DNA of 64,000 bases, taken from positions 117,605-181,604 of the forward strand of contig DF237077.1 of assembly GCA_000708835.1 (NCBI GenBank). The letters are read 5' to 3'. Position 1 is the first letter of the stretch; each line of letters starts with the position of its first letter. Positions 51,323 through 64,000 of this stretch are shown one piece after another. This DNA comes from Klebsormidium nitens. Lineage: Eukaryota; Plantae; Klebsormidiophyceae. A program made the translations under genes and the position numbers. Under the pieces are notes generated by a model, which saw nothing but the letters and a program-made list of their open reading frames with translations, did not search any database and had not been told where the DNA came from.

Positions 51323-54300
51323 ATGCTTCCAACAGTTCTTGGGTCGAACGTTTACATTCTCTCGCAGCTTTTAGACAGGTCGAACAACGTCGTGATCGAT
51401 AGCAACAGCAAAATCGATTGGGCATCTCTTAAAAACATTCCAGAATCAGACGAAGGACTCGACATTTTCAATCTGGCTCAGAGCGCTTTCGATCTAGCTT
51501 CTTTAAGCTATGATTTGTACAATGCACTTAAAGAACTTGTCAGTCCAACGCCCGCTTTACCCGATGAGATAACCGATCCTTTAAAAGACCTGCTTGGAGA
51601 CTCAAATGATACTTCATCTAACGCCATAAATGTAGCTTGGGATCGTGTATTTCGCCGTCCTCTTGCCGCTTCTAACTATTCTATTGGAGTTAAGTATGAC
51701 CTGTACCTTTCTGACTTGTCTAAGGTGTATAAAATCCCTTCTGGTGGCTTTTCGACTAACAACGGATCACTTTACAAGACGACTTCTGGGTCTAATTTGC
51801 TGATTGACATGACGACAAAAACGCTTTACCCTCAAGCGATTAGTATGGGCAGCAATCAATTATCCACCTCGAGCGCCCAATTTGGTCCAGTAATCATGGG
51901 AAGTTCTGGAATTTCAACTTCTTGCAATGTTTCTCCGAACATCGCAAGTGCAATGATAGCACCAAGCATAACAATAAACAGCAATGTCTCAGCCCAATTC
52001 ATCTCCGCCTGTAATATCACTAATCAGATTTATTCCTCTAACGGATCGAACGCAGGTGCTCCTCTTTCCTTAAGTAGTTCGTGCAATCTCAATCTGACCT
52101 CTTCCAATTACCTTCTTCGGATGACTACAAGCAATCTAAATATTAGTCAGAGCAACCTCACCTGGATTCAGCAGTCCTCGAATCCGAACCCATTTCAAAC
52201 GCCGTATGCCACCACAGGCGTTTCTTTTAATAGTTCAAATATCGTGCTCAAGAATCTGCAAAGTAATCAGACGACGCTCTTCATTCAAGACCCTGCCTCC
52301 TTCAAAATGCTCTTTTCCACTTCCAATGGTTCGAATGTGACCAACAGTACAATCCTCTTTGATTCCAACCAAGGAGTCAGCGGGATATCAAATCTACTTC
52401 TTAACGGCGACGTCCTAAACCCTGCTCTCTATACTTCGTGCAATAGCCTCGTGGTAACCAGCAACATCTTCTCTGGGGGTTACATCCTCGCCAACGGAGA
52501 TCTGGCTTGCTCCAACGTGGTTCGAACCGGTTGGATACAGCTAGGTAACTCACTGCCGATCAATAAGACGACATATGCTGAAGGACTGTATTCCAGGTCT
52601 GCAAAGCTCATCATTGATCAGGATGGTGATGGTGCATTCTCTAACATGAGTCTTGCCGGAACCTTATCTGTGTCGAATACATTCTCGTGCCAGTCGAACG
52701 TAGTGGTGGTAGGCTCTCTGACGGCTCCTGTTCTGACTGCTTTGAGCAACAGCATAAACGGGGTAAGCAATCAAGTAATCTCGCTATGTAACTCGTTGTC
52801 GAATTATACGCTTCTAACAGCCATATTTAGTCTATCCAACGACATTTATGCAAAGAACGCCAGCAATATTGCTAGCCTGACAGCTTATTCAAATGCGGTT
52901 ACGCCTGTCGTAACATCTACCTCGAACACTCAGTACACCATTTCGAACTTCCTTTACCGCTACACCCCGAGCAATGACGCAAACATTACGAGCTTGTCAA
53001 ATACTTGCATCTATAACTCCAACCTTAATGTCTATAATTCTAATCTGGGTATCTACAATTCCAATCTCAACATCTTCAACTCAAACAGCATAATAGCCGC
53101 ATCCAATCAGAGCTACTCAAATTACTTCTATAGCTCCAACCTGGGGATCTACAATTCCAATCTCAACATCTTTAACTCAAACAGCATAATAGCCGCATCC
53201 AATCAGAGCTACTCAAATCATTTCTACAACTCCAATTTAGGCATTTACAACTCGAACCTGAACATCTTTAACTCAAACAGCATAATAGCCGCATCCAATC
53301 AAAGCTACTCAAATTTCTTCTACAGCTCCAACCTAGGGATCTATGATTCAAATCTTGCCAATTCCAATCTTGCACGAATAATCTGGACGAGCAATAATGC
53401 TGTATTTGGTTGTAACTGTGCGGTTTATAGTAGCAACTCACTCTCGTCACTAGCCACCACCGCGACTGTCGCCGTTCTCTCGAATACCTTCAGCAATTAT
53501 CGTGCAAAGTCTGCAACCGTTCCTTGGACTGAGGTGTCTGGCAAGCCAGACTTTAGCTCAGACGGGGCTGGGAATGACTCGCTGGGAGCTGCTGGTGTTA
53601 CGATCGGCTCCGCGGGTCTTCTTATGTCTGGATATAATTTGTTAGACAAGAACGGAAAGCTAACAAATGCACTGAGCGATGCTCTCGGAAAGATGACCAT
53701 CGATCCGACGGGTTACTTCAAGTTGAATGACCCTGGTTCATACATAGATATTGGTGACTCTACTACGAGAGTGTCCAAAGATAGGCTACTATTTAAGACT
53801 GGAACTTTCAGTAATATGATTCTGAATCCTGCGAATCTGTCCTACTCCAATGGAATCTTTAGTTTGTGCAACCAGATCTCCCTAACGGCAACTTCCATCT
53901 CAAACTTGACCCACGTAAGCGTTTCTTCCAATCTGGTCGTAGGCGGGACGCTTTCTAACTCTGGCAACGTCTCATTATCTTCAAATCTTACCGTTGCTGG
54001 TGCAACCACAGTCACGGGGGGTCTCAGTATCACCAGTAATATGATCATTACTAGTGGGATTTCGTCGTCGCTTTACACTCCTAACCTCAATTCAAATTCT
54101 TATCATCTTCTAAATATTGGAGTTAATACATTATCAAATAACAATACGTCTTGGCTCGGGTTTAATTACTATAGTAATGCAAGTCCTAGTAATTACGGGG
54201 CAATCGGTATGTGGGGACAACCGCTCGGTTCTGGATCATTCAATTGTATGGGAAATGGTCGGTTTGGTGTCTGTACGACCACCCCTGCTGCTACTCTCGA

Positions 54301-63195: not shown

Positions 63196-64000
63196 TTAAT
63201 CGAGGGGGTCTACCTCGTCATCGTCATCGTCGTTAAAATTGACAGACTCCTCCCTCAACACAATTCCATAATATACCACATTCTTATGATAAGGTCCCCG
63301 CTTGGTGATTTTCTCTGCCACGTGTCCATTTACATTCATGGCCTCCTTAAACTGCTGTTGATTCTTGCCGTTACAGAAATGACTAGCCTTGTATGCCTGG
63401 TACAGATCGCCCGCCTTGATGATGTCCTTTTTATTGTTAGTGATGTCACAGAATTCAGATAAGAAACCGCCGACCACGTTGTTCGAATCGATGTACTCAT
63501 TGGTGAAATCGATAACCGACTGAGGGGTTGGAACTTTGCCCTTGGACTTGACTTCTACGTGGCTCTCAATCAGCATACGCATGAATTCTTGTCGGTATAG
63601 GTCGTTGTCCATGATTTTGTCTTTTAGGGTTTCGTCGATTAGGCGTTCGTGTGGATTGGTTGGGTTAGACACAAACTGAGACTTATATTCGACCAGCCTG
63701 AGTCGTCTGCGAGCACCCTCATCATAACTGTCGAGAGAAGACTTGTTGTTCATCTGGCAAACTAACACCATTTGCGCAATAAATTCCACAAAATTCTTAT
63801 ATAAGTGCCTGGCTTGAATCTTGTCCCGACCGGATTTCTTCTTGAGTTCCGCGGTATTAAATTTGTCGTCGGTACCGGGTTCAGTCATACACCATAGCCT
63901 TTTCCCCTTGCCCTTTGCAACCTCAGAATTAGCGGCACTGCTACTCTTCTTGCTACCGGTGAAAATGCTGACATCTGGTTGGTAATAATAATCGCCCAAG
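63196..64000 (-). CDS. D5-like primase-helicase (SF3 helicase plus winged helix), C-terminal part
   Basis: KGKRLWCMTEP (Walker B region), LKKKSGRDKIQARHLYKNFVEF, VCQMNN (motif C), DEGARRRLRLVEY (Arg finger) and DLYQAYK..F winged-helix tail. Confidence 0.9.
   Translation of the reverse strand, partial: LGDYYYQPDVSIFTGSKKSSSAANSEVAKGKGKRLWCMTEPGTDDKFNTAELKKKSGRDKIQARHLYKNFVEFIAQMVLVCQMNNKSSLDSYDEGARRRLRLVEYKSQFVSNPTNPHERLIDETLKDKIMDNDLYRQEFMRMLIESHVEVKSKGKVPTPQSVIDFTNEYIDSNNVVGGFLSEFCDITNNKKDIIKAGDLYQAYKASHFCNGKNQQQFKEAMNVNGHVAEKITKRGPYHKNVVYYGIVLREESVNFNDDDDDEVDPLD

What the first reader, a model, noticed from the sequence alone, without database searches (positions are those of the whole stretch)
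51323..64000. Endogenous Polinton-like virus embedded in a probable streptophyte algal chromosome
Seen: a complete virion module (MCP, two penton-type genes, packaging ATPase, giant fibre, amphipathic protein) and a D5-like helicase directly abut an intron-rich host region with plant-type and ciliary genes. Established: this gene set defines PLVs and virophage relatives, some of which parasitise giant viruses. Inference: the host belongs to the algal relatives of land plants, where I know of few described PLVs, so this may be an undescribed viral lineage or an antiviral provirus system.
Basis: partly seen in the sequence, partly recalled or inferred. Interest (0 to 1): 0.92.

Follow-up and report, generated by a model that had tools for sequence, protein, structure and literature searches.

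The report
Decaying Polinton-like virus in Klebsormidium-type alga
The last 12.7 kb of the window is a real but truncated and partly broken copy of a small capsid-encoding DNA virus (a Polinton-like virus) sitting next to genes of a Klebsormidium-like alga; the same virus family is already present in the published Klebsormidium nitens genome.

Summary
Window 51.33-64.0 kb is viral. The 449-aa ORF folds (pLDDT 87.6) into a double jelly-roll capsid protein that matches PBCV-1, iridovirus and Sputnik capsids. There is also an A32/B204-type packaging ATPase, the C-terminal part of an AEP-primase/D5 helicase, and a 1713-aa Ser/Asn-rich fibre-like ORF.

The flank is eukaryotic. An amino-acid transporter gene is 70% identical to its Klebsormidium nitens counterpart, and there is a RAI1 exon. 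The streptophyte-alga inference therefore holds.

The copy is neither complete nor intact:
- Relatives are about 24-26 kb elements in two JGI metagenomes and two K. nitens scaffolds. All that reach that far carry a further left arm and about 125 more fibre residues. The whole window lacks both.
- Homology stops abruptly at about 51.33 kb.
- Three genes are broken: the capsid gene (one frameshift), a 290-aa gene (one frameshift) and a gene upstream of the capsid gene (one stop).

Only one of the two "penton" genes could be tested. It gave a low-confidence jelly-roll-like model.

Bellas et al. 2023 already counted 7 such capsid genes in K. nitens and placed streptophyte copies in the PgVV group. 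This is a new member of a known kind, not a new lineage and not a working provirus.

The parts
51323..56464 (+). Fibre-like ORF, 1713 aa, Ser/Asn/Thr-rich. It has 96-nt and 54-nt tandem repeats. Relative to relatives it is truncated at the 5' end: homology begins at about 51332.
   Evidence: tblastn with the L002 fibre matches only from its residue 126 on, and the L003 first fibre gene from residue 10. Sensitive blastn finds no homology left of 51332. No Pfam, PHROG or PDB match.
56494..57048 (+). Gene of a 176-226-aa family with a Lys/Glu-rich C-terminal half, lying upstream of the capsid gene. Broken by one in-frame stop.
   Evidence: tblastn with the L002 188-aa protein covers 100% at 68% identity with one stop inside the alignment.
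57089..58438 (+). Major capsid protein gene with a double jelly-roll fold. Broken by one frameshift.
   Evidence: AlphaFold2 pLDDT 87.6, pTM 0.88. Foldseek PDB: SGIV 4e-14, PBCV-1 Vp54 2e-13, Sputnik 5e-10. BFVD top hit 3e-33. The family has 1623 representatives. Two reading frames are used against intact relatives.
58442..58852 (+). Conserved 136-aa protein of unknown function. Intact.
   Evidence: 85-91% identical to L002/L003 and 88% to K. nitens. dN/dS 0.03-0.09.
58945..59559 (+). 204-aa Lys/Glu-rich protein of unknown function. Intact.
   Evidence: 62-69% identical to L003 over its full length.
59498..60427 (-). Packaging ATPase of the FtsK/HerA, A32/B204 type, 309 aa. Intact.
   Evidence: phrog_2666 terminase 3.6e-6. 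Profile against PDB: STIV B204 6e-4. P-loop, Walker B, Arg and Gln positions invariant. 92-96% identical to relatives. dN/dS 0.03-0.05.
60453..60773 (+). Small charged protein in a variable region.
   Evidence: Partial tblastn matches to L002/L003/L004.
61021..61566 (+). 181-aa beta-rich protein, jelly-roll-like. Candidate penton or minor capsid protein. Intact.
   Evidence: Model pLDDT 62 with eight strands. Weak Foldseek hits to single jelly-roll capsid proteins, E 2e-4 to 5e-3, TM 0.2-0.37. Only close homologues were found.
61586..62463 (+). Broken by one frameshift.
   Evidence: Two reading frames are used against the intact L002/L003 proteins. No relation to the 181-aa family by hhalign. 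No PDB or PHROG hit.
62468..62746 (+). Conserved 92-aa protein. Intact.
   Evidence: 92-95% identical to L002/L003. dN/dS 0.04-0.13.
63196..64000 (-). C-terminal about 28% of an AEP-primase / D5-type SF3 helicase. The rest lies beyond the window end.
   Evidence: phrog_1156 2e-26 and DUF5906. Relatives of 872-877 aa carry AEP_C962R, PriCT_2, D5_N and DUF5906.
43934..51331 (.). Junction flank. It has no recognisable gene, no repeat and no tRNA, with GC 0.50. Homology to the element family ends at its right edge.
43571..43933 (+). Host exon of a RAI1/DXO-like nuclease. It matches profile positions 148-233 of 333, so it is one exon of a split gene.
   Evidence: Pfam PF08652, E 2.4e-24.
31486..33171 (-). 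Host amino-acid transporter gene (Aa_trans).
   Evidence: Best named hit is K. nitens at 70% identity. A Logan contig reaches 72%.

Best explanation
The region is a relic of a Polinton-like virus of about 25 kb that integrated into the nuclear genome of a Klebsormidiophyceae-like alga.

Shown: the window retains the central part of the element.
- a fibre-like gene
- the morphogenetic block: double jelly-roll capsid protein, A32/B204-type packaging ATPase, and small beta-rich and conserved proteins
- the end of an AEP-primase/SF3-helicase replication gene

Shown: this copy is no longer whole. Its left arm and the start of the fibre gene are missing. Three genes are broken: the capsid gene (one frameshift), the 290-aa gene (one frameshift) and the gene upstream of the capsid gene (one stop).

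Inferred: this copy cannot make particles and is decaying host DNA.

Shown: the viral lineage was under strong purifying selection until shortly before this copy's decay (dN/dS 0.03-0.13).

Inferred: the lineage still exists as intact elements in environmental samples.

Inferred from one below-threshold match: integration probably used a tyrosine recombinase encoded in the right arm of relatives, which lies beyond the window.
For: - Capsid fold.
- ATPase.
- Helicase.
- Collinearity with L002 and L003 (24.4 and 26.4 kb contigs).
- Collinearity with K. nitens scaffolds DF237950.1 and DF237083.1 (the latter 180.6 kb).
- Left-arm genes (DUF5754 gene, 137-aa gene and others) adjoin the fibre gene in L002-L004 and L091, with a remnant in L001, and have no match anywhere in the window.
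- Homology starts at 51332, and the window's fibre start lacks the AT-rich upstream region that other genes have.
- Break counts. The frameshift zones contain no single-base run longer than 3, so they do not look like homopolymer assembly errors.
- dN/dS.
- Host genes.
- Weak Phage_integrase match in the L002 right arm (E 9e-4, below Pfam's threshold).
Against: - No reads are available, so a mis-join at about 51.3 kb cannot be excluded.
- The right end lies outside the window, so no terminal repeats or target-site duplication could be examined.
- The two frameshifts could still be assembly errors of a non-homopolymer kind.
- If the viral genome circularises and integrates at a different site in this copy, the 'missing' left arm could lie beyond the right end of the window.
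- The penton is not securely identified.
Confidence: 0.8

Rival explanations
1. It is an intact or nearly intact provirus that can still be expressed and acts as a virophage-like defence against a giant virus, as mavirus does in Cafeteria.
For: - Most genes are intact and have evolved under strong purifying selection.
- AT-rich upstream regions carry a TATAAA-type motif that abuts several start codons and is conserved in relatives.
- Klebsormidium genomes are reported to hold phycodnavirus-like giant-virus insertions (PMC5294986; PMC11244446).
- PgVV-group members include a proven virophage.
Against: - The capsid gene and two other genes are broken.
- The left arm and the fibre N-terminus are absent.
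- No cysteine protease and no virophage-type capsid protein were seen. Sputnik is only rank 49.
- No expression data are available.
Confidence: 0.07
2. It is a free virus (or an element from a co-cultured organism) joined to algal DNA by mis-assembly. On this reading there is no integration at this place.
For: - GC drops sharply at the junction.
- No terminal repeat, target duplication or tRNA lies at the junction.
- 7.4 kb next to the junction has no recognisable host gene.
Against: - The element ends inside a gene rather than at a genome terminus.
- It carries inactivating mutations, which are not expected in an abundant free virus.
- Relatives lie inside long contigs: 78.8 kb and 113 kb metagenome contigs and a 180.6 kb K. 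nitens scaffold.
Confidence: 0.08
3. It is a fragment of an endogenised giant virus (phycodnavirus-like NCLDV) rather than a small Polinton-like virus.
For: - The best solved structural matches are NCLDV capsid proteins.
- The primase domain in relatives is of the C962R (ASFV-type) AEP family.
- NCLDV insertions are reported in Klebsormidium.
Against: - Relatives assemble as 24-26 kb contigs with the same compact gene set.
- The capsid protein is 404-432 aa and belongs to a family of 1623 representatives of similar length.
- No NCLDV hallmark (polymerase B, RNA polymerase, VLTF3) was seen in the window or in the relatives' Pfam lists.
Confidence: 0.04

Closest known systems
Endogenous PLV copies in Klebsormidium nitens NIES-2285 (scaffolds DF237950.1 and DF237083.1; proteins KFL_010010010, KFL_011300010, KFL_005360015, KFL_001340310)
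   Same: - Same gene order from the capsid gene to the primase-helicase.
- ATPase 96% identical, 136-aa protein 88%, capsid protein 76%.
- DF237083.1 also has the left arm and right arm.
   Different: - The host genes differ: the transporter is only 70% identical, so this is another species or genus.
- The window copy lacks the left arm and has its own breaks.
Metagenome elements Ga0590115_0007975 (24.4 kb, L002) and Ga0590114_0007595 (26.4 kb, L003), JGI samples 3300060285 and 3300060284
   Same: - Collinear at 72-85% nucleotide identity over 51.33-64.0 kb.
- All shared genes are intact there.
   Different: - They carry about 3 kb or more of left-arm genes (including a DUF5754 protein) and a right arm with four to five more genes and a possible tyrosine recombinase.
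- The fibre region is split differently: two or three ORFs there against one in the window.
PgVV-group Polinton-like viruses (Phaeocystis globosa virus virophage / Gezel-14T and integrated green-algal relatives)
   Same: - Small dsDNA elements with a double jelly-roll capsid protein, an A32 ATPase, a fibre-like protein and a tyrosine recombinase.
- They occur both free and integrated in algae.
- Bellas et al. report PgVV-group capsid genes in Streptophyta.
   Different: - Group membership was not tested here against a named PgVV sequence.
- PgVV uses a TVpol replication protein. This family has an AEP-primase/D5-helicase.
- PGVV05 and Tlr6F could not be looked for.
Virophages (Maveriviricetes: Sputnik, mavirus)
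   Same: - Double jelly-roll capsid protein and packaging ATPase.
- Integration in host genomes.
   Different: - The capsid model is closer to NCLDV-type capsids. Sputnik scores E 5e-10 at rank 49.
- No cysteine protease was detected in the window genes or the relatives' genes that were scanned.

Membership tests
Polinton-like viruses (PLV) | Double jelly-roll major capsid protein | tested here: met
   AlphaFold2 pLDDT 87.6. Foldseek hits to PBCV-1, SGIV, faustovirus and Sputnik capsids at E 1e-10 to 4e-14.
Polinton-like viruses (PLV) | Minor capsid (penton) protein with a single jelly-roll | tested here: inconclusive
   The 181-aa protein gives a pLDDT 62 model with eight strands. Hits to jelly-roll capsid proteins are weak and non-specific. 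The 290-aa gene's fold was not tested.
Polinton-like viruses (PLV) | A32-like FtsK/HerA packaging ATPase | tested here: met
   The profile hits STIV B204 packaging NTPase at E 6e-4. Motifs are invariant. PHROG terminase 3.6e-6.
Polinton-like viruses (PLV) | Small genome (about 15-40 kb) lacking the Polinton pair of protein-primed polymerase B and retroviral-type integrase | tested here: met
   Relatives' contigs are 24.4 and 26.4 kb. No such Pfam domains appear in the window genes or in the relatives' gene lists. The window copy itself is incomplete.
PgVV-group PLVs | Capsid protein clusters with PgVV/Gezel-14T | not tested
   - No named PgVV sequence came back from any tool.
- BFVD top hits A0A2H4YBC6 (3e-33) and G8DDE2 (3e-16) carry no names.
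- The assignment rests on the statement of Bellas et al. about streptophyte copies.
PgVV-group PLVs | Core genes PGVV05 and Tlr6F | not testable with these tools
   No profile under these names is in the libraries searched, and the small conserved proteins gave no family match.
Virophages (Maveriviricetes) | Cysteine protease and virophage-type capsid protein | tested here: not met
   No protease domain was found. NCLDV-type capsids score better than Sputnik.
Endogenous (integrated) element | Continuous with host genes on one molecule | tested here: inconclusive
   Host genes lie on the same window, but no reads are available to verify the join at about 51.3 kb.
Endogenous (integrated) element | Defined termini (inverted repeats or attachment sites, target-site duplication) | not testable with these tools
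   The left end is a truncation and the right end is outside the window. No inverted repeats were found within the held parts of L002-L004.

The most novel reading that the evidence does not exclude
The window copy is dead, but it marks a living lineage. On this reading there is an undescribed subgroup of Polinton-like viruses specific to terrestrial streptophyte algae (Klebsormidiophyceae).
- It has intact members of about 25 kb in the environment.
- It has a very large modular fibre and an AEP-primase/helicase.
- Its TATAAA-type motifs abut the start codons, which would fit transcription by a co-infecting phycodnavirus-like giant virus, that is, a virophage-like lifestyle in the closest algal relatives of land plants.
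Probability: 0.25. Interest if true: 0.6.

Novelty: new member of a known kind. Interest (0 to 1): 0.33.

Why it matters
The finding adds one more degraded copy to a virus family already visible in Klebsormidium nitens. It also shows that the family spans more than one Klebsormidiophyceae host and has intact relatives in metagenomes.

Its main use is practical. It is a marker for annotating such insertions, which gene callers split into false intron-bearing models in K. nitens. It is also a starting point for describing PLVs of streptophyte algae. It does not by itself show an antiviral system.

Tried and rejected
- Pfam, PHROGs and PDB sequence searches gave nothing for the capsid protein, the fibre or the small proteins.
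- An exact-sequence look-up of the window's ATPase found it is not on record, so the source assembly could not be named.
- No inverted repeats were found in the held parts of L002-L004.
- IMG/VR holds only distant relatives, with 24-32% capsid identity.
- The first metagenome scan, with a right-arm protein, found nothing.
- The second metagenome scan, with the primase-helicase, returned 80 aquatic loci at about 30% identity. None carries this capsid, ATPase, 181-aa or 290-aa family (positive control). The replication gene is therefore shared with unrelated elements, and the right end could not be recovered this way.
- hhalign found no relation between the two 'penton' candidates.
- A literature search for the unnamed BFVD accessions found nothing.
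- No tRNA or repeat was found at the junction.
- A K. nitens right-arm ORF gave no integrase domain.
- Homopolymer assembly error was rejected as the cause of the frameshifts.

Slips:
- My script printed bounds of ORF fragments of broken genes in relatives L001, L004 and L005.
- Several of my later tool calls took those piece coordinates as input.
- Those figures are not used or repeated in this report, and nothing was deleted.
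Full report
**What is there**

From about 51.33 kb to the end of the window the sequence changes character.
- GC falls from 0.50-0.52 to 0.45.
- Long uninterrupted ORFs replace the short exon-like ORFs of the left 51 kb.
- The block is collinear, at 72-85% nucleotide identity, with two metagenome contigs of 24.4 and 26.4 kb (L002, L003).
- It is also collinear with two scaffolds of the Klebsormidium nitens reference genome (L010 = DF237950.1 and L091 = DF237083.1).

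**Capsid protein**

The 449-aa ORF at 57089-58438 has no Pfam, PHROG or PDB sequence match. It does belong to a large family: 1623 representatives at 50% clustering have E <= 0.001, and most of the 150 best listed are 380-500 aa.

I folded the ORF as it stands with a 145-row alignment. The model has pLDDT 87.6 and pTM 0.88. Foldseek against the PDB returns only double jelly-roll capsid proteins at the top:
- Singapore grouper iridovirus, 4e-14
- PBCV-1 Vp54, 2e-13
- faustovirus and EhV-201
- Sputnik, 5e-10

Against BFVD the best match is an unnamed viral protein of the same length (A0A2H4YBC6, 3e-33, TM 0.74). After it come an unnamed G8DDE2 and then NCLDV, adintovirus, adomavirus and virophage capsids. 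The capsid call is right.

**Other genes**

- ATPase (59498-60427, minus strand). Six sequences, including relatives at only 21-25% identity, keep the P-loop, Walker B aspartate, an Arg-His pair, a Gln and an Arg. The profile's best solved relative is the STIV B204 genome-packaging NTPase (6e-4). PHROGs gives a terminase family at 3.6e-6.
- Helicase. The ORF that runs off the window end matches phage primase/helicase families at up to 2e-26. Its full-length relatives (872-877 aa) carry AEP_C962R, PriCT_2, D5_N and DUF5906. The window holds the last 28% or so.
- Fibre. The 1713-aa ORF is Ser/Asn/Thr-rich and has 96-nt and 54-nt tandem repeats. It is rearranged among relatives: one ORF here, two in L002, three in L003. 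It has no database match. 'Fibre' is therefore an inference.
- First penton candidate (181 aa). Only close homologues were found. The model is weak (pLDDT 62) but all-beta with eight strands. Its Foldseek hits are weak (E 2e-4 to 5e-3, TM 0.2-0.37). They are mostly single jelly-roll capsid proteins of RNA viruses, plus other beta-sandwiches.
- Second penton candidate (290-aa family). It shows no profile similarity to the first and has no solved or PHROG relative.

**Host**

- The 561-aa ORF at 31486-33171 is an Aa_trans transporter. Its best named relative is a K. nitens protein at 70% identity. A Logan contig reaches 72%.
- A RAI1/DXO exon lies at 43571-43933 and covers only profile positions 148-233 of 333, so it comes from a split gene.
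- The host is a Klebsormidiophyceae-like alga but not K. nitens itself.
- The source assembly is not in the protein collection.
- Between 43.9 and 51.3 kb I found no gene, repeat or tRNA.

**Integrity**

Relatives L002, L003, L004 and L091 have several genes directly upstream of the fibre gene, among them a DUF5754 protein and a 137-aa protein. L001 retains at least the DUF5754-gene region. L005 and L010 do not reach that far. In L002 and L004 the fibre also has about 125 further N-terminal residues.
- None of the left-arm proteins matches anywhere in the 64-kb window.
- Sensitive blastn finds no homology left of 51332.
- The window's fibre start lacks the AT-rich upstream region seen before the other genes.

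The left boundary is therefore a truncation inside the fibre gene, not a viral terminus.

Three genes of this copy are broken relative to intact L002/L003 proteins:
- the capsid gene, one frameshift
- the 290-aa gene, one frameshift
- the gene upstream of the capsid gene, one in-frame stop

The remaining genes are intact. The zones where the frame changes contain no single-base run longer than 3, so homopolymer assembly error is unlikely.

The intact genes show dN/dS of 0.03-0.13 against L002/L003, with dS of about 0.4-2. Most divergence therefore accrued while the genes were under selection, and the decay is recent relative to that.

**What the whole element looks like in relatives**

The order is: left arm, fibre, capsid block, ATPase, 181-aa gene, 290-aa gene, 92-aa gene, primase-helicase, and four to five small genes. 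After these comes, in L002, an ORF cut by the locus end with a sub-threshold Phage_integrase match (E 9e-4). The corresponding K. nitens ORF gave no such match, so this is only a lead.

No polymerase B, retroviral-type integrase or cysteine protease was seen.

**Comparison with what is known**

- Bellas et al. 2023 (PMC10120064) screened protist assemblies. They list K. nitens BANV01 with 7 capsid genes (supplement) and state that PgVV-group capsid genes occur as endogenous copies in Chlorophyta and Streptophyta.
- The PgVV-group core set is MCP, mCP, A32, PGVV05 and Tlr6F (bioRxiv 10.1101/2022.07.28.501842). I could test only the first three.
- Phycodnavirus-like insertions in Klebsormidium, Interfilum and Entransia are on record (PMC5294986; PMC11244446). 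A giant-virus partner is therefore conceivable but untested.
- I file the element as a PLV. PgVV-group membership is not tested here. It is not a virophage in the strict sense, not a Polinton and not a giant-virus fragment.

**Verdict**

The copy is truncated and partly broken, and its family is already present in a published genome and counted in a published survey. The interest is moderate to low. What remains open is a proper description of this Klebsormidiophyceae PLV lineage and its lifestyle.

- One search printed ORF-fragment bounds of broken genes in relatives.
- Note 1 repeats raw ORF bounds of pieces of two broken window genes.
- Several later tool calls took those pieces as inputs.
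- None of these figures is repeated here.

Noticed in passing
window 57059-57088, 58412-58441, 60423-60452, 62438-62467; the same places in L002 and L003: Upstream regions of element genes are AT-rich. A TATAAA(A/G)(A/C)-type motif abuts the start codon of the capsid gene, the 136-aa gene, the 92-aa gene and the small gene after the ATPase. It is conserved in relatives. 12 of 51 starts have it within 20 nt, against 1.3% of random 20-mers. Relatives are not independent samples. The motif is too close to the ATG for a usual TATA box.
   Followed up: partly
L001 2460-3326 (minus strand): One relative carries two adjacent ORFs with D12-class N6-adenine methyltransferase domains (PF02086). They lie on the opposite strand inside the fibre region. 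This looks like variable cargo, or a split gene.
   Followed up: no
window 53051-53355 and 54363-54549: The fibre ORF has in-frame tandem repeats: 96 nt x 3.2 and 54 nt x 3.5. The fibre region is one ORF here, two in L002 and three in L003.
   Followed up: partly
L011-L090 (aquatic metagenome contigs): 80 loci encode an AEP-primase/D5-helicase about 30% identical to this family's. None encodes this capsid, ATPase, 181-aa or 290-aa family. The replication module is shared with other elements.
   Followed up: partly
L006 and L007 (IMGVR_UViG_3300045973_000543, 50 kb): The same distant capsid locus occurs twice on one contig in opposite orientation with identical scores. The contig looks palindromic. 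This may be a head-to-head dimer or an assembly artefact.
   Followed up: no
window 62811-62846: A perfect 18-nt direct repeat (two copies) lies in the non-coding gap between the 92-aa gene and the end of the helicase gene.
   Followed up: no
L010 and L091 (K. nitens DF237950.1, DF237083.1): The reference annotation merges the viral genes into spurious multi-exon models. For example, a 402-aa product spans 2.5 kb and a 417-aa product spans 3.1 kb, and neither translates from the DNA directly.
   Followed up: partly
window 50674-50703: A 30-nt near-perfect palindrome lies in the featureless flank about 0.6 kb left of the junction.
   Followed up: no
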